Virus record (IMG/VR): IMGVR_UViG_3300032288_004964 | Location: 62,001-126,000 of that record | DNA length: 64,000 bases | Reading direction: 5' to 3' (one strand) | Shown here: one piece after another, positions 3,932 to 53,202 of the stretch | Layout of the letters: every line of letters starts with the position of its first letter | How positions within the stretch are numbered: the stretch's first letter is position 1 | Program-made: the position numbers and the translations under genes | The notes under the pieces: generated by a model | What the model was told of the DNA's origin: nothing | Databases searched by the model: none | What the model saw: only the letters and a program-made list of their open reading frames with translations

Positions 3932-5269
3932 CTATATATAAAAATAATCAGTATAATTATTTGACTTTAATCGGTATCTCATAATTTGTCTATCTATTCC
4001 CGATCCATCAACTGCTTTTGATATAGATTCATAAATAATTCCATTTATAGAGACCGATTTTAGTTTTGGTATGCCTGTTTCTTTTAACTCGACCACTTTA
4101 TCCAAATAAAACCAACTTGGATATGATTTTGAGTTAAGTCTCCAATTTATATAATCATGTGTTTTTTTTAATTCTTTTACAGCTTCTGTTATTGACCCAT
4201 ATTCTTTTCCTTCTATTGATATTCTTTCTTTTTTTGACAGATGTGGATCAACTTCAATAAATTTATTATACTTTATGTTTAGATCATTATCTTTGAATAG
4301 ATAGTTTTTGAAGTGAGATGACTTTAATCTTGAACGTATTAAAGACCTATCAATACTAAGTCTTTCAACAGATTCGGAAATAGATTTATATTCTATATTA
4401 TCAATGATTATTTCTTTTTTAGTCTCCTGGTCAAACTTTTTTCTTTTTTCTTGAAGTCTAATCTTTATTTTTAATTTTAAATCTTCGCCAATATATTCAT
4501 AAAATTTATATCTTCTTTTAAAAAATCTATTCGGTACACAATCAATATATAAAATTAAACCATCTATATCTTTTTCAATAATTAGTCTATCGATCTTATC
4601 AAATTCCTCATTTTCTCTAATTTTTAATTTTCCAAAAATATACCTTAAATCCTCCCCAAAGAACTCGTAAAAACCATAAGCATTTTTAAGAAAATTATGG
4701 TCTACTCTTTTTTTAATTAATGATAGTTCGTTTAGATAATCATCAATATTTCCAAATTTTATCTCGTTTCTAATAAATTCACATCTTTCTTTAAATTCAT
4801 CATTATATTTCTTCCACTTTTTTTCATTTTTTAATTTAGATTCTGTAGATAAAATACTCTTATGTATATTTTTTTTAAGATTTTCTTTGTATATCTTAGC
4901 TTTTTCCAAACCAAATGCTTCTTCATAGGTTTTACCCTTTTTGGGACTATTTTTAGATATCTTCTCTCTTATTAATTCTAAATCAGGATGATTAGATAGA
5001 GTATCTCCTCCATCACCACCAGGAGCGATATTATATCCTATTTTTCTATCAGTTGATTTATAATATGATATCCAATAAATCTCCTTCTTTGAAAGTACAT
5101 TATAGTCATCAGTTTCATCAATAATTTCTTTGATGAAATTTTCCATTCCATATTTTTTTAAAGACCTACTAATTATCAATCCTGATCCAAAATAGTTGGG
5201 ATCTGATGTGGTGTCTTTGCCTATATAAATTTTATTATTTACAAGATTGGTTATTTTATATATTTGCAT
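3932..5269 (-). mobile_element. Free-standing GIY-YIG (Seg-like) homing endonuclease
   Basis: QIYKITN..N.KIYIG, YFGSG, GYNI..GGDGG; three C-terminal Y.SI..A...L NUMOD1-like repeats. Confidence 0.85.
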
Positions 5270-18317: not shown

Positions 18318-18369
18318 CTAAACTTTTTAATCATTTTCAATTATAAAAAAAAACAAAAACAAAATAAAT

Positions 18370-18801
18370 ATGGATAATTTCTATGAATTGTCGGAAGACA
18401 CAATATCTAAATTTTTAGAGGTTTTTAATAAAAAAACTTTCCCAGTTTCTATCAAATTTCAATTTGAAGGAGATGAAAAACAAAAAGAACTTATTAAAAT
18501 ATCAGTAATCCCACCAAAGTACCAATTTATAATTGGTAAGGATTTATTAGTATCAATTAATGAAGATATTCTAAATGTATTTGATGACGAATCAGTAACT
18601 ATTTTACTTGAACAAGAAATTGACAAAATCAATATGAATATTGAGACTGGTAAAATTAAACTTGTTAAAACAGATTTAAATACATTCTCATCACTTGTAA
18701 ATAAGTATGGTGTTGAAAAAGTAGCTAGAGCTAATAAGGTTGAAGAACTTTATAAAGAACAACAAAAAGATGCTGCTCAAGACGAAGAATTTATTGTATA
18801 A
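18370..18801 (+). CDS. Putative phage-metallopeptidase-like protein lacking HExxH
   Basis: LLEQEIDKI...DLNTFSSLVNKYG parallels HELxHI...HDvEeF..iv.ryG. Confidence 0.35.
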   Translation: MDNFYELSEDTISKFLEVFNKKTFPVSIKFQFEGDEKQKELIKISVIPPKYQFIIGKDLLVSINEDILNVFDDESVTILLEQEIDKINMNIETGKIKLVKTDLNTFSSLVNKYGVEKVARANKVEELYKEQQKDAAQDEEFIV

Positions 18802-38316: not shown

Positions 38317-40017
38317 ATGCTCGTAGAGACACAATATTTAAGTAATAGTAAGAAATTAGTAGTAAGTTATGTTGATAAATCCGGTGAAATCAAACTAAAA
38401 TACTACAATTGGGATAATCCAATGAAGTATATTTCTTGTGAGGATAATGATCCTCTAAAGCATCCTACATTTAGATCTTGGGATGGTAAGTCTGTTAAAC
38501 AAATAGAAGTTAGTCACCCAGATAGATACGCTATTTATGAGTTTTTAGATGACTTGCCTGAAGCAGAAAGAAATGAAATATTTGAATTTAATTTACCAAA
38601 AATATTTTTTATAGATATTGAAACTGAAATTGTTGATGGATTCCCAGAGGCGGCTGATGTTTTAGACCAACATGGTAATGTTACTAAAGAAGGAGCATCA
38701 ACTCAAGTTCTTTCTATATCAATTGTTTATGATGATAAAATCATTTTATTAGGTCTTAAGGATTTAAGTGAAGATGCTCAATTAAGAATAAAAAATAACA
38801 GTAACAAATACTTTGAAAAGTTTGGTGCTGATTATAAATTCAAATATATCAAGTATGATGATGAGTTTGATATGTTATATGCTTTCTTCTACAAGATGAT
38901 TCCAAAAATGCCTATACTAACCGGTTGGAACTTCCTTAAATATGACTGGTTATATTTAGTAAACCGTTCAAGAAAAATATCTAAGTGGACTAATGGTAAA
39001 GAATATAAAATTGATCCAGCAGTTTCTTCCCTAACAAAAAGATTAAATAAAATCTGGTCAACTGATTTTGAAGTTCCTGCCCATAGAATGATATTTGACT
39101 ACATGCAATTGTATGAAGTTTGTGATACTTCTATTAAAGTAAAGGAATCATCAGGGTTGGACTTTGTGGCTAGTAAATTAGTAGGCGTTGAGAAAGTTAA
39201 ATATGTTAACTCAATTTATAAATTGAAAGAAGACTCTACTATTAACGGGTATTCTTTTAAAGAAGGTGACATTTGTAGAACAGAAGGAGATACTTATTAT
39301 ATGTATGTTGGTACTGAGAGAGTAATATTTACAAAAGAAAACTTTTCAAAGCATAAAAGTCTTTTCAAAGAAGTAAATGTTTCTAACCTACAGAAGTTAT
39401 ATGAAGAAGATTTTGAAATCTATATGTACTATAACGCGGTTGACTCGGTTTTAGTTCAAAAGATTCATGATGCTCGTAATTACATTTCAATTATTTATGC
39501 GATTTCATCATTGGCTAAGATAAGAATTGTTGATGTTGTTTCTCAAATGAATAACGCTCTTGGTTCATTAGCTATTACAGAAGGAGTTTTAAGAAATAGA
39601 TTCCGTGAGATGGATAATATTGTTCTTTTCCGTGATGAAAAAGGAGATGCTGAATCAACTATCGCTGGTGGGTGGGTAAAGGATCCTGTTGTTGGTATGA
39701 ATCAGTGGTGTGTTTGTTATGACTTTGCGTCACTATATCCAACAACACAAAGACAATTCTTTATAGCACCTGAAACATTTGTCGGTGTTCAAGATGAGAA
39801 AGATAAATCTAAATGTTCAAATGGTAGACCAATTGATTTGGATAAACATGTTTTATGTGTTAATGGTGTTGTTTTTGAGAAAAGAGTATCACCAACTTTA
39901 ACTATGTTAGAGGATGTTTATGCTGATAGAAAGAAGGCTAAGAAAGTGATGATGGATAAAAAAGAAGAATTGAAATCTATTATAGATGAGATTAAACAGT
40001 TAGAAGCAGAATTATAA
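38317..40017 (+). CDS. DNA polymerase B, N-terminal part (exonuclease plus motif A) of a split gene
   Basis: DIETE, TGWN...YD, YNAVD, GGWV, DFASLYP; ends in fingers helix without NSxYG or YGDTD. Confidence 0.85.
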   Translation: MLVETQYLSNSKKLVVSYVDKSGEIKLKYYNWDNPMKYISCEDNDPLKHPTFRSWDGKSVKQIEVSHPDRYAIYEFLDDLPEAERNEIFEFNLPKIFFIDIETEIVDGFPEAADVLDQHGNVTKEGASTQVLSISIVYDDKIILLGLKDLSEDAQLRIKNNSNKYFEKFGADYKFKYIKYDDEFDMLYAFFYKMIPKMPILTGWNFLKYDWLYLVNRSRKISKWTNGKEYKIDPAVSSLTKRLNKIWSTDFEVPAHRMIFDYMQLYEVCDTSIKVKESSGLDFVASKLVGVEKVKYVNSIYKLKEDSTINGYSFKEGDICRTEGDTYYMYVGTERVIFTKENFSKHKSLFKEVNVSNLQKLYEEDFEIYMYYNAVDSVLVQKIHDARNYISIIYAISSLAKIRIVDVVSQMNNALGSLAITEGVLRNRFREMDNIVLFRDEKGDAESTIAGGWVKDPVVGMNQWCVCYDFASLYPTTQRQFFIAPETFVGVQDEKDKSKCSNGRPIDLDKHVLCVNGVVFEKRVSPTLTMLEDVYADRKKAKKVMMDKKEELKSIIDEIKQLEAEL

Positions 40018-40665
40018 TACTCTAATTGTCTTAAAATCTATATTTGGAAGTTTTTCTTTTACTACTCTTGTTGCTTTTGTTATGTATTTAGCATTATCAT
40101 CGTAGAAAATAGCTTTTTTGAATCCAGTTTCATTAAGTATTTCAACTATCTTCTCACCTTTCCAGTGTCCAGCATTTTTAGTATTATCAGGTATCATGTG
40201 TAATCCAAACTTAGGAGTTTCTAATCCAAATTCTTTTAGTTTGGATTCTATTTTACTTCTTAGACTTTCGGGTCTTGCTGTTACAATACATTTGTTTTTA
40301 ATTGACGAGTATAGATTAGATAATTCTTTAATGCTGGTAGGTAAACTTATATCAGATAAATGAAAAACATTAGGAGTTACTAAATAAACTCTTTTACCTT
40401 TTCTTACCCAGTTACCAAATTCTTTAATTTCATCTTTAGGGTCATTTACATATATTCTACCATTTTCCCATTTTAAGTCTCTTAAATTAACTCCTATTCT
40501 TCCTACAGATGTTTTAAGCATATCACCAATACTTAAATCTTCTTTTAGAAATTCAATAGCTAGCTCTTCAAAACTTGGGGAATTAACAAGCGTGTCATCA
40601 AAGTCAAAGATGTATAAGGTATCTTTGTTTTCTAAAAACTCATTAAATTTTTTAATCTTCATCAT
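40012..40665 (-). CDS. HAD phosphatase (Swiss-Army-knife RNA repair-like)
   Basis: IFDFDDTLV.SP, VTAR, K, FYDD. Confidence 0.7.
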   Translation of the reverse strand: MMKIKKFNEFLENKDTLYIFDFDDTLVNSPSFEELAIEFLKEDLSIGDMLKTSVGRIGVNLRDLKWENGRIYVNDPKDEIKEFGNWVRKGKRVYLVTPNVFHLSDISLPTSIKELSNLYSSIKNKCIVTARPESLRSKIESKLKEFGLETPKFGLHMIPDNTKNAGHWKGEKIVEILNETGFKKAIFYDDNAKYITKATRVVKEKLPNIDFKTIRVL

Positions 40666-47779: not shown

Positions 47780-50332
47780 ATGAGCAGTATAAAAGTAATA
47801 AAAAGAAATGGAAAGAAAGAACCGGTGATGTTAGACAAGATTCTTGATAGAATCACACAACAAACTTATGGTCTTGATACTAAGTGGATTGTTCCATTTG
47901 AAATCGCACAGAAAGTTATAGAAGGTATTATGCCTGATATTAAAACATCTGTTTTAGATCAATTAGCTATGGAAACAGCAGCTTCATTGACTACAAAACA
48001 TCCAGATTATTCTGTCTTAGCAGCAAGATTAGCTATTACAAACCTACACAAAGAAACTAAAAAGAGTTTTTCAGAAACTGCTGAAGATTTATACAAATAT
48101 GTAAATCCAAAAACTGGAAAACACGCACCAATTGTTTCAGAATCTTTTTATAGCATTGTTAAAAAACACGCTGATGAATTAGATTCAGCTATTGTTCACT
48201 CAAGAGACCACAATTTTGATTACTTTGGTTTCAAAACTTTAGAAAAGTCTTATCTACTAAAAATTGATGGTAAAGTTGCTGAAAGACCTCAATATATGTA
48301 TATGAGAACTGCCTTACAAATATGGGGTGAGAATATTGAAAAGGTAGTTGAAACTTATAATACACTTTCTGAAGGATATTATACACATGCTACTCCAACT
48401 TTATTTAACTCTGGCACAACAAGACCACAATTATCATCTTGTTTCTTACTTGATGTTGAAGATGATTCAATTGAAGGTATCTTTAATACTCTTAAAGAAT
48501 CTGCTCAGATTTCTAAGAATGCTGGTGGTATAGGTATTGCTTTCTCTAAAGTTAGAGCTAAAGGAACTTATATTGCTGGTACTAATGGTACATCAAATGG
48601 TATTATTCCTTTCTTAAAAATCTACAATGAAACTGCAAGAGCTGTTGACCAAGGTGGTGGAAAAAGAAAAGGTTCAATCGCTATTTATATGGAACCTTGG
48701 CATTCAGATATTTTTGAATTCTTAGATTTAAGAAAGAATCAAGGTAAAGATGAAATAAGAGCTAGAGATTTATTTTTAGCTATGTGGATGAATGATTTAT
48801 TTATGGAAAGAGTTGAATTAGATGCTGATTGGTCATTAATGTGTCCACATGAGTGTCCTGAGTTAACAGAAACTTTTGGTGATGAATTCCGCAATATCTA
48901 TTTAAAATATGAATCTAGTGGAAAAGCTAAAAAAGTAGTTAAAGCAAGAGAAGTTTGGAATAAAATTCTTGAATCTCAAATTGAAACTGGAACTCCTTAT
49001 ATTCTTTATAAAGATGCTATTAATGAGAAGTCAAATCAAGCTAACATTGGTGTGATTAGAAGTTCCAACTTATGTGCTGAGATTGTAGAAGCAACTGGTA
49101 TTACTAAGATTCAAAATGAAATTTTACAAAATAAAGAATTACTTGAAAAAGCTGGACTTTCTGAGTTCTATGGTGAAGAATCGGTTAATGAAACTGCAGT
49201 TTGTAATTTAGCATCTATTGCACTTCCTAAGTTTGTTAATAAAAACAGAACTTATAACTTTAATAAGTTGTATGAAATTGCTTACTCAGCTATCATTAAC
49301 TTAAACAATGTTATTGATGTTAATTATTATCCATCTAGAGGTGCTAAGTTTTCTAACTTATTACACAGACCAGTTGGATTAGGTGTTCAGGGATTAGCTG
49401 ATGTTTTCTTCTCAATTGGAGTATCTTATGACTCAGATGAGGCAAAACAATTAAACAAGGAAATCTTTGAAACTATCTATTATGCTTCAATTAAAGCTTC
49501 TTGTGATTTAGCTAAAGAACAAGGGACTTATGCTACTTATGCTGGTTCTCCTATATCTCAAGGTAAATTCCAATTTGATTTATGGAATGTTAAACCAACT
49601 AAGAGATGGGATTGGGATAAATTAAGAGAAGAAGTTAAAAAACATGGTGTTAGAAACTCTTTAACAACTTGCATCATGCCAACTGCTTCTACTGCATCTA
49701 TTTTAGGTAATGAAGCTTCTTGTGAAGCACAAACATCTAATATGTACACAAGAGGTGTTCTTTCTGGTACCTTTATCTTAGTAAATAAATACTTAGTTAA
49801 GGAATTAGTTAAGTTAGGATTATGGAATGATAATTTGCGTAAGAAGATTATCAATGAGAATGGTTCAGTTCAGAATATTCCAGAAATTCCAACAGGATTG
49901 AAAGAGATTTTCAAAACAGTTTATGAAGTTAAACAAAAAGATGTTATTGATATGGCAGCTGATAGAGGAGCATTTATTGACCAAACGCAATCAATGAATA
50001 TCTTTATGGATTCTCCAAACTTTGCTAAATTAACATCAATGCACTTTTATGGTTGGGGTAGAAGAAACTTTATAACTGGAACTGATGGTCAACCTATTAT
50101 TCCACAAGGAAGTGATATTCAAGTTATCTATGATAAAGATGGTAACCCAAGATGTTATAGAGATAAGAAAGTTTCTCTTAAAACAGGAATCTACTATCTG
50201 AGAAATAAATCAGCAACTGATGCTGTTAAGTTTACAGTTCAAGAGGAACAAAAGAAATCAGTTGAAGAACAAATGGCTGAAATCAGTTGTTCACTTGACA
50301 ACCCAGATGATTGTTTAGCTTGTGGATCATAG
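47780..50332 (+). CDS. nrdA: Ribonucleotide reductase class Ia alpha subunit
   Basis: ATP cone VIKRNG, ATPTLFN, SSCF, SNLCAEI, MPTAST, TGIYYLR, C-terminal CLACGS. Confidence 0.97.
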   Translation: MSSIKVIKRNGKKEPVMLDKILDRITQQTYGLDTKWIVPFEIAQKVIEGIMPDIKTSVLDQLAMETAASLTTKHPDYSVLAARLAITNLHKETKKSFSETAEDLYKYVNPKTGKHAPIVSESFYSIVKKHADELDSAIVHSRDHNFDYFGFKTLEKSYLLKIDGKVAERPQYMYMRTALQIWGENIEKVVETYNTLSEGYYTHATPTLFNSGTTRPQLSSCFLLDVEDDSIEGIFNTLKESAQISKNAGGIGIAFSKVRAKGTYIAGTNGTSNGIIPFLKIYNETARAVDQGGGKRKGSIAIYMEPWHSDIFEFLDLRKNQGKDEIRARDLFLAMWMNDLFMERVELDADWSLMCPHECPELTETFGDEFRNIYLKYESSGKAKKVVKAREVWNKILESQIETGTPYILYKDAINEKSNQANIGVIRSSNLCAEIVEATGITKIQNEILQNKELLEKAGLSEFYGEESVNETAVCNLASIALPKFVNKNRTYNFNKLYEIAYSAIINLNNVIDVNYYPSRGAKFSNLLHRPVGLGVQGLADVFFSIGVSYDSDEAKQLNKEIFETIYYASIKASCDLAKEQGTYATYAGSPISQGKFQFDLWNVKPTKRWDWDKLREEVKKHGVRNSLTTCIMPTASTASILGNEASCEAQTSNMYTRGVLSGTFILVNKYLVKELVKLGLWNDNLRKKIINENGSVQNIPEIPTGLKEIFKTVYEVKQKDVIDMAADRGAFIDQTQSMNIFMDSPNFAKLTSMHFYGWGRRNFITGTDGQPIIPQGSDIQVIYDKDGNPRCYRDKKVSLKTGIYYLRNKSATDAVKFTVQEEQKKSVEEQMAEISCSLDNPDDCLACGS

Positions 50333-50351
50333 TATTCAAAAAATTATTAAA

Positions 50352-50386
50352 AAAAATAGGGAAAATTAAAAACTTTCCCTATTTTT
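50352..50386 (+). terminator. nrdA terminator
   Basis: AAAAATAGGGAAA..TTTCCCTATTTTT. Confidence 0.85.
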
Positions 50387-50471
50387 GTGCTATAATTAAT
50401 CCACCCTTGAAAAAACTGAAATTTTAAGGGTTGATATATACAATCAATCAGAAATATTTTTATAGTCTTAT

Positions 50472-50497
50472 AAACTTTTAGAAAATTCTGAATATAA
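50472..50497 (+). promoter_or_regulatory. AAAC-N16-ATATAA promoter upstream of the non-coding unit
   Basis: Exact motif, with no credible + strand ORF before the terminator. Confidence 0.55.
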
Positions 50498-50530
50498 ATA
50501 AACCGTTCTTTAAAATACAATTAAATTACT

Positions 50531-50595
50531 CCAGTAGTAAATTGAAGTGTTACTTCGCAGGATATGAAAAAACACACTTTGATGATTTCCTCTGG
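50531..50595 (+). ncRNA. Candidate Y-RNA-like module 1
   Basis: CCAG/CTGG outer stem, internal loop TAGTAA/GATTTCCT, 10-bp stem ATTGAAGTGT/ACACTTTGAT, loop starting TACTTCG; upstream of Ro60. Confidence 0.55.
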
Positions 50596-50615
50596 TCAAT
50601 ATAATTAAAAGCAAA

Positions 50616-50661
50616 CATAGCGATAGTTTGAGATACTTCGATAAATATCAATTCAACTATA
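50616..50661 (+). ncRNA. Candidate Y-RNA-like module 2 (partial)
   Basis: TAGCG, stem ATAGTTTGA/TCAACTAT, second TACTTCG. Confidence 0.4.
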
Positions 50662-50676
50662 CAGAAAAAGTGACAA

Positions 50677-50881
50677 GCGACAGCAAGTCTACTGTATTCA
50701 AATAAAACCGAAAGGAGATTTGAATTAAAGTGAAAAAGTCCGAAAAGCAACCCCCGTTAAGGTCTAAGGAATTCAGCTGATTTTCCTTTAAATAAAAAGC
50801 TGAGTGATATGGTCACTACAACTATAGGCAAAGTTTAGGAGAGAATTCTTTGTAACGCTTAGGCTAAATTTACTTGTTTGC
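50677..50881 (+). ncRNA. Candidate long Y-RNA-like module 3
   Basis: Ends pair (GCGA/TTGC; AGTCTA/TAGGCT) around loop CAGCA/AAATTTACT; inner hairpins ATTCAAAT..CCGAAAGG..ATTTGAAT, ATTCAGCT/AGCTGAGT, AGTGA/TCACT. Confidence 0.5.
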
Positions 50882-50888
50882 AAATTAT

Positions 50889-50929
50889 AAAAGACCAGAT
50901 TAACATATGTTACTCTGGTCTTTTTTTTT
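50889..50929 (+). terminator. Strong intrinsic terminator between the ncRNA and the Ro60 gene
   Basis: AAAAGACCAGA-TTAACATATGTTAC-TCTGGTC followed by a long T tract. Confidence 0.85.
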
Positions 50930-50965
50930 GTAATTAAATTAAAATTAAAAATTAAAATATAGATT

Positions 50966-52417
50966 ATGTCAAAATTTAACACAACTGCCCCAAAGGCAAA
51001 AACTTTAACTGAAAACCTAGCAGGTGGTCAGGCTTACAAACAATCTGATGAACTAGCATTAGTATCATTGTTATTAACTTCATTTGTTAATGATCAATTC
51101 TATAAAAATGCTCAAACAACTCTTGAAGATTTAAGAAAACTTTCTGAGAAAGTAAAAGATAAAGAGTTTGTTGCGAAAGCCGCTATTTTCGCTCGTGACC
51201 GTTTTGGTATGAGAAGTATCACTCATGCTCTTGCTGGTGAATTAACTTCACAATTGAATGGTGCTGAGTGGGGTAAGAACTTCTATGATAAAGTAGTTGT
51301 CCGTGTTGATGATATGACAGAAATCATGTCATACTACTTAGCATATAAAACATCTAAGAATAATCCAAAGTTTCCAAATTCTTTGAAGAAAGGATTTGCT
51401 AAGGCTTTTGATAAATTTGACTCTTATCAACTTGCTAAATACAAAGGTGATAATAAGGAAGTTAAACTTGTTGACGTTGTGAACATTGTTCATCCAGTTC
51501 CAAATGCTAGAAACAAGTCTGCCTTAGAACAACTTATTAAAGGTGAACTAAAAAGCACAGATACTTGGGAATCTAAGTTATCACAAGCTGGTCAATTAGC
51601 TGAGTCTGAAGAAGATTTAACTAAATTAAAGTCTGATGCTTGGTCTGAGTTAATCATTGGTAAAAAGATTGGTTACTTTGCTCTTCTTAGAAATCTAAGA
51701 AACATTATTAACCAAGCTCCTACTGCTATTCCAGCAGCATGTGAGTTATTAGTTGATGAAAGAATGATTAAGAGCTCTAGGGTTCTTCCATTTAGATTCA
51801 CCACAGCTTATGATGAAATATCTAAGTTAGGTTCTTCTAAGGAAGTGCGTGATGTTTTAGTTGCTATCAATAAGGCTTTAGACATTTCAGTTTGTAATGT
51901 TCCAAAGTTTGATGGTGAAACATTAGTAGTTATGGATGTATCTGGATCAATGAGTGGTAAACCATCTGAAATAGCTTCATTATTTGGTGCTATTTTAGCT
52001 AAAGTTAATAACTCTGATGTTATGACTTTCTCTACTTCCGCTAACTATAAGCAATATAATCCAATGGATTCAGTATTGACTATTAGAGATGGATTTAGAT
52101 ATTCTGGTGGTGGAACAAACTTCCGTGCAATCTTTGAGAAGGCTAATAAGAAGTATGACAGAGTTATCATCTTGTCAGATATGCAAGGTTGGGTTGGTTA
52201 TGAAACACCAACTCGTCAATTTGCTGAGTATAAGAAAAAGTTTGGAGCTAATCCATTTGTTTACTCTTGGGATCTGGCTGGTCTTGGTACTTTACAGTTC
52301 CCAGAACAAAATGTCTTTGCTTTAGCCGGTTTTTCTGATAAAGTATTCGACATCATGAAGATGATGGAGTTGGACAAGAAAGCTCTTTACAATGAGATTA
52401 AGGATATACAGTTGTAA
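50966..52417 (+). CDS. rsr: Ro60/TROVE-domain RNA-binding protein with vWA domain
   Basis: N.AGG.AY, FY, YQLAKY, TWE..LS, ALLRNLRN, LPFRF..AY, MIDAS DVSGSM, GGT, ILSDMQ. Confidence 0.92.
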   Translation: MSKFNTTAPKAKTLTENLAGGQAYKQSDELALVSLLLTSFVNDQFYKNAQTTLEDLRKLSEKVKDKEFVAKAAIFARDRFGMRSITHALAGELTSQLNGAEWGKNFYDKVVVRVDDMTEIMSYYLAYKTSKNNPKFPNSLKKGFAKAFDKFDSYQLAKYKGDNKEVKLVDVVNIVHPVPNARNKSALEQLIKGELKSTDTWESKLSQAGQLAESEEDLTKLKSDAWSELIIGKKIGYFALLRNLRNIINQAPTAIPAACELLVDERMIKSSRVLPFRFTTAYDEISKLGSSKEVRDVLVAINKALDISVCNVPKFDGETLVVMDVSGSMSGKPSEIASLFGAILAKVNNSDVMTFSTSANYKQYNPMDSVLTIRDGFRYSGGGTNFRAIFEKANKKYDRVIILSDMQGWVGYETPTRQFAEYKKKFGANPFVYSWDLAGLGTLQFPEQNVFALAGFSDKVFDIMKMMELDKKALYNEIKDIQL

Positions 52418-52448
52418 AAAAAACCCACTCATTGAGTGGGTTTTTTTT
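52416..52448. terminator. Bidirectional intrinsic terminator
   Basis: AAAAAAACCCACTCA-t-TGAGTGGGTTTTTTT. Confidence 0.9.
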
Positions 52449-53202
52449 ATCCATTATCTTCTCTATAAGCATTTACAGAATCATTAATTTCTTGTCTATC
52501 TATTATAAATTTCTTAGTTTCTGTATCATATGAAGCTACTCCGTATAAGTCTTCGCTAATAAAAACTCCGATTAGAATATACCCTTCTTCATCATCAGTA
52601 GTATCCATATATTTATCAAAGTCTATCCCTTCTTTTCTATAGATATTTCTAAGTTTTTCTAGTCCTTCTAAGTATTCTTTATCTTTTGTTGAAATGTATT
52701 TATTATATATGTCTTTTAATTCTTTTGTATTTATCTCATCGCTTAAAAATGTTATAAAAAATTTATGATTGATACTTTCCTTTGTATTATCTACAGATTC
52801 TGGATGACCTACAGATAATGATGTAACTATATAAGTATTATCTTTTAATTCCAATCCTTTTGATTCCGCTCTACTAATCATTTCATCAATTGAGATATTA
52901 ATTGTATTTAGATTATCAATAACTTTACTAAAATCATTTTTACCTGATTTTATATTATATTGAATCAAGCAGTTATATAACATTCTATATGTCTCATTAT
53001 CATCAACTTCAGCGTTGACTGCTTTAAGTTTTGAATCAACTAAATATCTATATGTTCTAGCTGAAGCAAATTCTTTAACATCAAATAAACTATCATTGAA
53101 TGTGTCTAATGAAATAGATTTAAATGTCAAGAAGTCTTGATAATCTTTAGATGTTCCAAAACTTTCATTTATAGAAAAGTCATTATATCTTTTTAATTTC
53201 AT
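52447..53202 (-). CDS. Hypothetical, putative head-packaged protein
   Basis: MKLKRYNDFSINES. Confidence 0.55.
   Translation of the reverse strand: MKLKRYNDFSINESFGTSKDYQDFLTFKSISLDTFNDSLFDVKEFASARTYRYLVDSKLKAVNAEVDDNETYRMLYNCLIQYNIKSGKNDFSKVIDNLNTINISIDEMISRAESKGLELKDNTYIVTSLSVGHPESVDNTKESINHKFFITFLSDEINTKELKDIYNKYISTKDKEYLEGLEKLRNIYRKEGIDFDKYMDTTDDEEGYILIGVFISEDLYGVASYDTETKKFIIDRQEINDSVNAYREDNG

What the first reader, a model, noticed from the sequence alone, without database searches (positions are those of the whole stretch)
50472..52417. Phage-encoded Ro60 ribonucleoprotein: TROVE gene with its own upstream non-canonical Y-RNA-like cassette
Seen: the only long (~630 nt) gap in an otherwise packed window sits directly before an intact Ro60/TROVE-vWA gene. 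It has a phage promoter (50472-50497), about 425 nt of relatively GC-richer hairpin sequence and a strong terminator (50889-50929). Known: bacterial Ro (Rsr) genes are typically flanked by Y RNA genes that tether Ro to effectors such as PNPase and are linked to RtcB RNA repair. Inference: the phage makes its own Ro RNP, for example to salvage or degrade RNA cut by host anti-phage ribonucleases. The RNAs lack the paired GUCCGA/UUGAC stem and a GTTCGA T-loop, so they would be a distinct class.
Basis: partly seen in the sequence, partly recalled or inferred. Interest (0 to 1): 0.85.

Follow-up and report, generated by a model that had tools for sequence, protein, structure and literature searches.

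The report
Phage Ro60 gene with two Y-RNAs
A large freshwater phage carries an intact Ro60 (TROVE) gene. Just upstream are two conserved, structured non-coding RNAs that look like its Y-RNA partners: a known kind of system in a new variant, because the larger RNA has swapped the usual tRNA-like part for a new, knotted module.

Summary
The 634-nt gap (50333-50965) is the largest ORF-free stretch in the window. It is followed by an intact 483-aa Ro60/TROVE-vWA gene, and it ends in a strong conserved terminator.

The gap is conserved upstream of TROVE in every related locus with enough flank (78 loci, 64 distinct sequences). It folds into two covariation-supported RNAs on the + strand:
- a 65-nt bulged hairpin (50531-50595);
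- a 271-nt RNA (50611-50881) closed by a 5'/3' stem, with internal hairpins and a pseudoknot.

Each carries an invariant UACUUCG at the top of its 5' stem strand. A covariance model of the hairpin finds the same stem next to distant (32-36% identical) TROVE genes of crAss-like phages. In one of these, the stem encloses a tRNA-like module that matches Rfam YrlA below its threshold, and UACUUCGA aligns with YrlA's proposed Ro-binding motif.

So these are Y-RNA-like genes of a phage subtype. The short one is a minimal Y RNA. The long one has a novel module in place of the tRNA mimic.

Phage Ro60 with upstream Y-like RNAs is already known (Chen 2014; Thermus phage phiLo 2025). This is a new variant, not a new kind. 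Binding and function are untested.

The parts
50390..50441 (+). Conserved upstream element: AATCCAC, then an imperfect hairpin (50404-50413 with 50422-50430), then GATATATAC. Function unknown; possibly a promoter or operator, or the 5' leader.
   Evidence: AATCCAC is present in 53 of 61 related loci upstream of the hairpin RNA. The element is unique in the window. There are some compensatory changes in the stem, which decays in divergent members.
50472..50497 (+). Promoter-like pair of boxes (AAACTTTT ... ATATAA)
   Evidence: AAACTTT is in 60 of 61 loci, with the ATAWAA box 18-20 nt downstream in most, at a median of 48 nt upstream of the hairpin. There are only 2 matches in the window against 0.64 expected. 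Function is inferred.
50531..50595 (+). Short Y-RNA-like hairpin (called HP1 here). From the base: stem 50531-34/50592-95, bulged U50535, stem 50536-40/50587-91, 3-nt bulge 50584-86, stem 50541-50/50574-83, then an apical loop.
   Evidence: On 51 sequences, 94.2% of cells are paired against 32-48% when the partners are slid. 100 cells have changes on both sides against 6-29, and the covariation score is 0.409 against at most 0.089. CM R1 scores 75.6 bits here and finds no other hit in the window.
50551..50557 (+). Invariant motif UACUUCG, copy 1, at the junction of the 5' stem strand and the loop
   Evidence: UAC[U/A]UC[G/A] is present in 63 of 64 homologues at this position, and the next base is A in about 60%. 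It matches the motif next to other phage TROVE genes.
50611..50881 (+). Long Y-RNA-like RNA (called domain 2 here). The closing stem has three parts: P1 50611-17/50875-81, P1b 50618-21/50863-66 and a motif-adjacent helix 50628-32/50858-62. The inner module holds hairpins P3 (about 50669-50693), P6, P7 and P8 (50828-33/50848-53), plus clade-variable hairpins at about 50695-50765.
   Evidence: P1 is 98.4% paired with 28 double-change cells. P1b is 98.4% paired, the top helix 96.6%, and P7 93.5% with 23 double-change cells. For P8, most pairs are canonical in at least 56 of 64 sequences, with CG/UA and AU/GC exchanges. G.U cells outnumber A.C cells 354 to 61, which indicates a + strand transcript.
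50634..50640 (+). Invariant motif UACUUCG, copy 2, in the same position relative to the 5' stem strand as copy 1
   Evidence: A profile of the HP1 5' strand has its second-best hit in the whole window at 50619-50642, in register (E 0.14).
50766..50817 (+). Hairpin P6 (50766-71/50783-88); pseudoknot between the P6 loop (50774-78) and 50798-50802; hairpin P7 (50803-06/50814-17), whose loop AUAUGGU (consensus AGAUGGU) recalls a D-loop
   Evidence: P6 is 99% paired. The pseudoknot is kept by at least 9 different complementary sequence sets. P7 pair types are AU, CG, GC and GU.
50893..50929 (+). Intrinsic terminator ending the RNA cassette, 36 nt before the TROVE ATG
   Evidence: Stem plus T9, conserved with compensatory changes in all homologues.
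50966..52417 (+). Ro60/TROVE-vWA gene, 483 aa
   Evidence: Pfam TROVE and vWA. Best solved relative is Thermus phage phiLo Ro60, 9KOP/9L5Y, at E 1e-23 over the full length. An AF2 model (pLDDT 75.8) matches phiLo, Deinococcus, Xenopus and human Ro60 at TM 0.61-0.74. The MIDAS residues D324, S326, S328, T384 and D405 are invariant.
52414..52450 (+). Terminator after TROVE, shared with the convergent gene 52447-53202 (-)
   Evidence: 17-bp stem flanked by A and T runs.

Best explanation
The gap encodes a transcription unit: a promoter-like site, then two non-coding RNAs, then an intrinsic terminator. Its RNAs are the Y-RNA partners of the Ro60 protein encoded immediately downstream.

Both RNAs have the Y-RNA layout. 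A long, bulged stem is made from the 5' and 3' ends. An invariant UACUUCG(A) sits where the 5' strand enters the loop, and I take it as the phage-type equivalent of the GNCGAA / GGUCCGA motif that Ro60 contacts. A loop module follows.

The short RNA (50531-50595) is a minimal, hairpin-type Y RNA, comparable to YrlB or Yrn2. In the long RNA (50611-50881), the tRNA-like module of YrlA is replaced by a pseudoknotted module of about 215 nt. That module presumably tethers the Ro60 ring to an effector, as Y RNA tethers Rsr to PNPase in Deinococcus and Salmonella, and as the phiLo Yrl RNAs form complexes with host PNPase.

Shown: conservation, structure, strand, linkage to TROVE, relationship to Y-RNA stems elsewhere, and the Ro60 fold of the protein.

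Inferred: transcription, Ro60 binding, effector recruitment, and any role in infection. One possibility is PNPase-mediated breakdown of structured host RNA into nucleoside diphosphates that feed the neighbouring ribonucleotide reductase.
For: 1. The element lies upstream of TROVE in all 78 related loci with enough flank (64 distinct sequences). It is there even where the RNR gene is not the direct neighbour, and it occurs once in the window.
2. Covariation supports the hairpin and, in the long RNA, the closing stem, P7 and the pseudoknot; P6 and P8 are almost fully paired with few or no double changes. G.U outnumbers A.C 354 to 61.
3. No conserved ORF: the longest stop-free stretch has a median of 55 aa, and the region has many indels.
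4. CM R1 of the hairpin hits only next to TROVE genes of distant phages, always on the TROVE strand. In the annotated records the hits lie in non-coding DNA: cr111_1 (39.9 bits), csAssE-Sib (38.1), cr112_1 (27.0) and IMG/VR locus L110 (24.0).
5. In L110, and by eye in csAssE-Sib, that stem encloses T- and D-arms. In L110, Rfam YrlA aligns over its full length (34.5 bits, below the 69-bit gathering threshold) and places its 5' 'ggCgaA' on ACUUCGAU.
6. The signature [UG][AG]G[UC]G[AUG]-N8-13-UAC[AU]UC[GA] has 30 matches on the TROVE strand and 0 on the other strand. Shuffles predict 0.6. This is across 16 diverse phage TROVE loci.
7. The protein is a full-length Ro60 by sequence and by predicted fold, and its closest solved relative is phiLo Ro60. 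phiLo Ro60 binds two Y-like RNAs encoded upstream of its gene (PMC12135203).
8. Two Y RNAs per locus, one a long hairpin and one carrying a module, both upstream of Ro60 and processed from one precursor, is the documented bacterial pattern (PMC4201824).
Against: There are no expression or binding data. The window copies do not match the published GNCGAA motif: copy 1 reads UUCGCA and copy 2 UUCGAU. No Rfam Y RNA or YrlA match was found even at E<=10, and there is no T-arm. The YrlA hit in L110 and the other phage YrlA hits are below Rfam's gathering score. R1 found nothing within 1.5 kb of TROVE in phiLo, Vibrio phage SRILMA, HGTV-1 or crAss001. A terminator 36 nt before the ATG, with no obvious promoter after it, would also fit a cis-acting leader. 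The effector for the long RNA is unknown, and I saw no PNPase, RtcB or RNA ligase among the window ORFs scanned.
Confidence: 0.75

Rival explanations
1. The cassette is a cis-acting leader (attenuator or riboswitch-like) of the TROVE mRNA. On this view the terminator at 50893-50929 controls read-through into TROVE, and the structured RNA senses a signal or is bound by Ro60 for autoregulation.
For: It is on the same strand, the terminator ends 36 nt before the ATG, and no recognisable promoter lies between them. The 5' half of the terminator (GACCAGA) is complementary to the 3' strand of the short hairpin (UCUGGUC, 50591-50597), so an alternative pairing is conceivable.
Against: In other phages the same hairpin RNA is not adjacent to the TROVE start. 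In cr111_1 it is about 670 nt upstream, separated by a tRNA-like element, its own terminator and an ORF. In cr112_1 it is downstream of TROVE. The hairpin and terminator changes are not consistently concerted. Leaders of 400 nt with two repeats of a protein-binding-type motif are not typical. The two readings are not exclusive, since Y RNAs can be processed from a Ro60 precursor transcript (PMC4201824).
Confidence: 0.1
2. The RNAs are structured phage non-coding RNAs whose function is unrelated to Ro60 (for example decoys, tRNA-related RNAs or replication elements), and they merely share a neighbourhood with TROVE.
For: There is no match to any curated Y RNA model. The inner module of the long RNA has no known counterpart. 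Phage TROVE genes often sit in tRNA and small-RNA clusters.
Against: The linkage to TROVE persists from 100% down to 32% protein identity, across very different phages and on the TROVE strand only. The motif aligns with YrlA's proposed Ro-binding motif. Experimental precedent exists in phiLo (PMC12135203).
Confidence: 0.12
3. The gap holds small protein-coding genes, or is non-functional spacer whose hairpins arise by chance.
For: Mechanical ORFs of 57-66 aa exist on the minus strand. The single-sequence fold z-score is only -2.0.
Against: None of these ORFs is conserved, and indels are frequent. There are many compensatory base-pair changes. Conservation extends to 56% identity over about 400 nt.
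Confidence: 0.02

Closest known systems
Thermus phage phiLo Ro60 with Yrl1 and Yrl2 (PDB 9KOP, 9L5Y; PMC12135203)
   Same: A phage-encoded Ro60 that is the closest solved relative of the window protein (E 1e-23; TM up to 0.74). Two Y-like RNAs are encoded directly upstream of the gene on the same strand, and a short CGA-containing motif is used to recognise them. In vitro the RNAs bind the protein and form complexes with host PNPase.
   Different: Protein identity is only about 25%. The phiLo RNAs were defined by a CGAA motif and RNAfold. My hairpin model R1 and the extended signature find nothing in the phiLo upstream region. In this work the RNAs are defined by covariation over 64 sequences, the motif is UACUUCG, and the second RNA is much larger (271 nt) and pseudoknotted.
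Bacterial YrlA/YrlB (Salmonella, Mycobacterium) and Yrn1/Yrn2 (Deinococcus); Rfam RF02553; PMC4201824
   Same: At least two Y RNAs per locus lie within 2 kb of Ro60. One is a long hairpin and one carries a large module. The Ro-binding motif sits on the 5' strand of the terminal stem. In M. smegmatis both lie upstream of rsr and are processed from one precursor. YrlA was also reported in 22 phages.
   Different: No tRNA-like T- and D-arm module and no Rfam hit at any threshold tried. The motif is UACUUCG(A) rather than GNCGAA. The short RNA's loop is A-rich and 23-35 nt long, not small and pyrimidine-rich.
Unannotated Y RNAs of crAss-like and related gut phages found here (cr111_1, cr112_1/crAss001, csAssE-Sib, IMG/VR locus L110)
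   Same: They share the stem signature (UAGUGA ... G[A/U]UACUUCR ... UUACUC) and the linkage to a TROVE gene of the same PHROG-type clade. R1 scores 24-40 bits.
   Different: In L110 and csAssE-Sib the stem encloses T- and D-arms (confirmed by a sub-threshold YrlA hit only in L110). In cr112_1 and crAss001 there are five copies downstream of TROVE. The window's long RNA carries a different inner module, for which nhmmer finds no counterpart there.

Membership tests
Ro60 / TROVE protein | TROVE domain detectable by profile | tested here: met
   Pfam PF05731 at 5.9e-17 (cut-off passed) and PHROG 850 at 3e-44 over residues 1-465.
Ro60 / TROVE protein | C-terminal vWA domain with the MIDAS motif DxSxS...T...D | tested here: met
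   VWA_CoxE and vWA_Ro60 hits. D324, S326, S328, T384 and D405 are invariant across homologues down to 27% identity.
Ro60 / TROVE protein | Overall fold of solved Ro60 (HEAT-repeat ring closed by vWA) | tested here: met
   AF2 model with pLDDT 75.8 and pTM 0.68. The top 13 Foldseek PDB matches are all Ro60: phiLo, D. radiodurans, Xenopus and human, at TM 0.61-0.74. This is a predicted, not a solved, structure.
Ro60 / TROVE protein | Binds Y RNA on its outer surface and misfolded RNA in its cavity | not testable with these tools
   Needs EMSA, RIP or a structure.
Y RNA (broad sense: Ro60-partner ncRNA) | Encoded close to the Ro60 gene | tested here: met
   The RNAs lie 85-435 nt upstream of TROVE on the same strand, in all 78 related loci with enough flank.
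Y RNA (broad sense: Ro60-partner ncRNA) | Long stem formed by the 5' and 3' ends, interrupted by bulges, with a loop module | tested here: met
   Covariation-supported stems in both RNAs.
Y RNA (broad sense: Ro60-partner ncRNA) | Ro-binding motif on the 5' strand (GGUCCGA in animals; GNCGAAN0-1G in bacteria) | tested here: inconclusive
   The literal motif is absent. The invariant UACUUCG occupies the same position, and in L110 it aligns to the YrlA model's 'ggCgaA'. The variant recurs next to TROVE genes of 10 of 16 diverse phage loci.
Y RNA (broad sense: Ro60-partner ncRNA) | Physically bound by Ro60 in vivo | not testable with these tools
YrlA (Rfam RF02553) | Score at or above the family gathering threshold (69 bits) | tested here: not met
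   No hit in the window at gathering, nor at E<=10 in 50300-51000.
YrlA (Rfam RF02553) | tRNA-like module with conserved T-arm and D-arm | tested here: not met
   ARAGORN finds nothing, and there is no tRNA-clan hit and no GTTCGA/GTTCAA T-arm. Only the P7 loop (consensus AGAUGGU) resembles a D-loop.
Hairpin-type Y RNA (YrlB / Yrn2) | [quoted passage not shown] | tested here: inconclusive
   The long bulged hairpin with the motif is present. The loop is 23-35 nt and A-rich, not small and pyrimidine-rich.

The most novel reading that the evidence does not exclude
Two linked readings remain open. First, the inner module of the long RNA (about 215 nt: P3, clade-variable hairpins, the P6/P7 pseudoknot and P8) may be a new effector-recruiting domain that has replaced the tRNA mimic of YrlA. 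It would then direct the phage Ro60 ring to a partner or substrate other than the PNPase/tRNA-enzyme set known for bacterial Y RNAs. Second, URGYGN-N8-13-UACUUCR may be a previously unrecognised, phage-wide Ro60 recognition code that also flanks genes now annotated as phage tRNAs.
Probability: 0.3. Interest if true: 0.7.

Novelty: new variant of a known kind. Interest (0 to 1): 0.5.

Why it matters
Ro60/Y RNA particles are conserved from bacteria to humans, yet what their RNA modules recruit is understood in only a few species.

This locus offers a compact natural experiment. One Ro60 comes with a minimal Y RNA and with a large Y RNA whose tRNA mimic has been exchanged for a different, well-conserved fold. 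There are 64 natural sequence variants to guide mutagenesis.

The UACUUCG stem signature also links Y RNAs of freshwater giant phages, gut crAss-like phages and several proteobacterial phages. It gives a simple handle for annotating phage Y RNAs that Rfam misses, and for re-examining 'tRNA' genes beside phage TROVE genes.

It does not change the general picture that some phages bring their own Ro RNP.

Tried and rejected
- Rfam at gathering threshold on the whole window, and at E<=10 on 50300-51000, gave only noise. ARAGORN found no tRNA or tmRNA.
- Single-sequence folding was uninformative (z -2.0 on the + strand, -3.3 on the - strand). The strand was settled instead by the G.U versus A.C counts and the terminator.
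- The GUCCGA at 50738-50743 looked like the animal Ro motif but is not conserved.
- Reading the long RNA as tRNA-like was rejected. P7 looks D-arm-like, but P6 and P8 are not T-arms.
- Helix P2 (50623-28/50655-60) has only partial support: 6 of 6 pairs in 31 of 64 sequences against 15% in shuffles. It crosses the motif-adjacent helix, so I report it only as possible.
- My first coordinates for P3 were off by one and were corrected.
- A truncated R1 search on the 5' part of the long RNA was uninformative. A sequence profile of the 5' strand gave the in-register second-best hit.
- The search for related loci with a diverse TROVE alignment failed because no stretch was conserved enough.
- Genome contigs held no close relative of the protein, so the host is unknown.
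I re-ran it with permitted rows only.
- Rfam found nothing in the extra insert between terminator and ATG in L015 and L016.
- The review PMC10870794 is not held.
Full report
**1. What is there**

With ORFs of at least 110 aa, the window is tightly packed. The stretch 50333-50965 (634 nt) is its largest ORF-free gap; the next largest are no more than 291 nt. It follows the large subunit of a ribonucleotide reductase (47780-50332; Pfam E 1e-199) and that gene's own terminator (about 50357-50386). It precedes an intact 483-aa ORF (50966-52417) that hits Pfam TROVE (5.9e-17) and vWA, and PHROG 850 'RNA-binding protein' (3e-44, full length). The window as a whole looks like a large phage: PolB, DnaB, a helicase, thymidylate synthase, a DNA methylase and a tail-fibre chaperone domain. 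Its only close GenBank relative is the 634,780-bp uncultured phage LR745206.1, with a TROVE 81% identical and the gap about 76% identical.

**2. The protein is a real Ro60**

- Its best solved relatives by sequence are the Ro60 of Thermus phage phiLo (9KOP/9L5Y; E 1e-23; residues 12-476 aligned), then D. radiodurans Rsr and human Ro60.
- An AlphaFold2 model (pLDDT 75.8, pTM 0.68) has Ro60 structures as its top 13 PDB matches: phiLo, Deinococcus, Xenopus and human, at TM 0.61-0.74.
- The MIDAS residues of the vWA domain (D324, S326, S328, T384, D405) are invariant down to 27% identity.

**3. The gap is conserved and travels with TROVE**

Protein-guided searches gave 20 IMG/VR loci and 78 metagenome loci, mostly from freshwater lakes, with TROVE 68-100% identical to the window protein, plus two partial loci at 46% and 53%. 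A profile of the gap's core finds the element directly upstream of TROVE in every locus with enough flank: 78 full-length copies, 64 of them distinct. It finds only one copy in the window, at 50527-50929. In many loci the RNR gene ends more than 1 kb further upstream, so the element goes with TROVE rather than with RNR. Identity to the window ranges from 0.56 to 0.96, median 0.71. No ORF is conserved; the median longest stop-free stretch is 55 aa, and there are many indels.

**4. First RNA: a bulged hairpin, 50531-50595**

From the base upward the hairpin has:
- a 4-bp stem (50531-34/50592-95);
- a bulged U50535;
- a 5-bp stem (50536-40/50587-91);
- a 3-nt bulge on the 3' strand (50584-86);
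- a 10-bp stem (50541-50/50574-83);
- an apical loop that begins with the invariant UACUUCG (50551-57), followed by a variable mini-hairpin and an A-run.

On 51 distinct sequences, 94.2% of cells are paired, against 32-48% when the partners are slid. One hundred cells have changes on both sides, against 6-29. The covariation score is 0.409, against at most 0.089, and no shuffle out of 500 reaches the observed value. G34, U35, A36, G37, A40, U87, C90, U91 and C92 are invariant. That pattern is what one expects of a protein-recognition site.

**5. Second RNA: 50611-50881**

The 5' and 3' ends form an interrupted stem:
- P1, 50611-17/50875-81: 98.4% paired, 28 double-change cells;
- P1b, 50618-21/50863-66: 98.4% paired;
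- a helix next to the motif, 50628-32/50858-62: 96.6% paired, with G.U, A-U and G-C exchanges but no A.C.

A second invariant UACUUCG (50634-40) follows immediately. The interior contains:
- hairpin P3 (about 50669-93);
- clade-specific hairpins (about 50695-50765);
- P6 (50766-71/50783-88; 99% paired);
- P7 (50803-06/50814-17; AU, CG, GC and GU types);
- P8 (50828-33/50848-53).

A pseudoknot joins the P6 loop to the 3-5 nt just 5' of P7, and at least nine different complementary sequence sets maintain it. A further helix, P2 (50623-28/50655-60), has only partial support.

Across the supported helices, G.U cells outnumber A.C cells 354 to 61, so the + strand is the RNA strand. This agrees with the terminator (50893-50920 plus T9), which also covaries. 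A profile of the first RNA's 5' strand has its second-best hit in the whole window at 50619-50642, in register (AGYGA ... GAGWUACUUCGA; E 0.14). The two RNAs therefore look like diverged copies of one design.

**6. Flanking signals**

AAACTTT followed 18-20 nt later by ATAWAA lies a median of 48 nt upstream of the hairpin in 60 of 61 loci. It is conserved but unproven.

Further upstream is a second conserved element (50390-50441: AATCCAC, an imperfect hairpin, GATATATAC). It is unique in the window and present in most loci. I cannot assign it a function.

**7. Is it a Y RNA? Direct tests fail**

No Rfam family matches, including Y_RNA, YrlA and tRNA, even at E<=10. ARAGORN finds nothing.

**8. 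Is it a Y RNA? Comparative tests succeed**

A covariance model (R1) built from the hairpin scores 75.6 bits on the window and has no other hit there. It does hit next to TROVE genes that are only 32-36% identical (tblastn 30-32%), always on the TROVE strand. In the annotated records the hits lie in non-coding DNA:

| Phage or locus | Coordinates | Score |
|---|---|---|
| crAss-like cr111_1 | L101:759-828 | 39.9 bits, E 1e-6 |
| csAssE-Sib | L114:1497-1630 | 38.1 bits |
| cr112_1 (downstream of TROVE) | L115:4122-4198 | 27.0 bits |
| IMG/VR locus | L110:2294-2444 | 24.0 bits |

Four cr111_1-like IMG/VR contigs are also hit.

In L110, and by eye in csAssE-Sib, the R1 stem encloses an obvious T-arm and D-arm. 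In L110, Rfam YrlA aligns over its whole length (34.5 bits; below the 69-bit threshold). It places its 5' 'ggCgaA', the GNCGAA motif that Chen et al. propose as the Ro60 contact (PMC4201824), onto ACUUCGAU. In cr111_1 the hairpin is followed by a tRNA-like element with a perfect T-arm.

The extended signature [UG][AG]G[UC]G[AUG]-N8-13-UAC[AU]UC[GA] occurs 30 times on the TROVE strand and never on the other strand. Shuffles predict 0.6. This is across 16 diverse phage TROVE loci (85 kb). These include crAss001 and cr112_1 (five copies each), csAssE-Sib, Caulobacter phage CcrColossus (five copies), Xylella phage Usme and a Microcystis phage. In L110 and Usme, a signature copy coincides with a sub-threshold YrlA hit; VanLee has YrlA hits and the short motif but not the extended signature.

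I conclude that UACUUCG(A) on a URGYGN-type stem is the phage-type version of the Y-RNA Ro-binding stem, and that both window RNAs carry it.

**9. Comparison with what is known**

Chen et al. 2014 reported YrlA next to Ro60 in 254 bacteria and 22 phages. [quoted passage not shown] In M. smegmatis both lie upstream of rsr and are cut from one precursor (PMC4201824).

In 2025, the Ro60 of Thermus phage phiLo was shown to bind two Y-like RNAs encoded upstream of its gene, and these RNAs form complexes with host PNPase in vitro (PMC12135203). Jumbo-phage surveys already list TROVE proteins (PMC7824862), and TROVE is an early gene in crAss001 (PMC10136315).

The idea that 'the phage makes its own Ro RNP' is therefore established. 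Three things are new here:
- the specific subtype, in which the short RNA is a minimal Y RNA shared with Crassvirales;
- replacement of the tRNA mimic in the long RNA by a conserved pseudoknotted module of about 215 nt, with no counterpart in Rfam or in the other loci;
- the breadth of the UACUUCG signature.

**10. Mechanism (inferred)**

By analogy with the Deinococcus and Salmonella Rsr-Y RNA-PNPase machine and with phiLo, the stem and motif would dock on the outer face of the Ro60 ring, and the loop module would recruit an effector. The conserved RNR-(0-2 genes)-Y RNAs-TROVE order and the surrounding nucleotide-metabolism genes suggest a role. The particle may help degrade structured host RNA, with PNPase phosphorolysis yielding nucleoside diphosphates that RNR can use. 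This is speculation.

A cis-regulatory reading (terminator 36 nt before the ATG) remains possible as an additional role. It is disfavoured as the sole explanation because the same RNA sits far from, or downstream of, TROVE in other phages.

**11. Verdict**

I classify this as a new variant of a known kind, with interest about 0.5. The main open points are expression, binding, and what the new module recruits.

Noticed in passing
L104:3020-3640 (crAss001) and L115:3940-4560 (cr112_1): There are five tandem copies of the Y-stem signature (UAGUGN ... UUACUUCA) downstream of the TROVE gene. One lies inside a tRNA-model hit of 142-144 nt whose anticodon region is replaced by a long insert carrying the motif.
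   Followed up: partly
L114:1645-1884 (phage csAssE-Sib): The annotated tRNA-Tyr and tRNA-Lys genes upstream of TROVE are each directly preceded by the Y-stem signature (UGGUGA ... GUUACUUCG). They may be modules of Y RNAs rather than free-standing tRNAs.
   Followed up: partly
L101:1040-1113 (cr111_1): A tRNA-like element lies between the hairpin RNA and TROVE. It has a perfect T-arm and a 6-nt anticodon-like loop (24 bits to tRNA-Sec; not called by ARAGORN). A terminator follows at about 1160-1198.
   Followed up: partly
L015:2884-2990; L016 and L019:about 2912-2995: In a few relatives, an extra insert of 80-90 nt with long complementary arms sits between the cassette terminator and the TROVE ATG. 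It has no Rfam match.
   Followed up: partly
window 50390-50441: This conserved element (AATCCAC, an imperfect hairpin, GATATATAC) lies upstream of the RNA cassette. It is unique in the window and present in most related loci, and its function is unknown.
   Followed up: partly
window 38317-40017: The family B DNA polymerase ORF (566 aa) covers only the exonuclease domain and about the first third of the polymerase domain profile. The gene may be split or interrupted; a 217-aa ORF lies on the other strand at 40012-40665.
   Followed up: no
window 3932-5269 (-): This ORF has an I-TevI-type DNA-binding domain at its C terminus and is probably a homing endonuclease.
   Followed up: no
window 18320-18348: This is the only other match in the window to the promoter-like pattern AAACTTTT-N-ATAWAA. 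It sits just upstream of the ORF starting at 18370.
   Followed up: no
L105:1079-1307 (Gordonia phage VanLee); L118:815-1820 (CcrColossus); L119:1265-1849 (Xylella phage Usme): Sub-threshold Rfam YrlA hits and one to five copies of the UACUUCG motif occur upstream of TROVE (the extended signature matches in CcrColossus and Usme, not VanLee). In VanLee an annotated tRNA-Arg (1204-1275) overlaps the region.
   Followed up: partly
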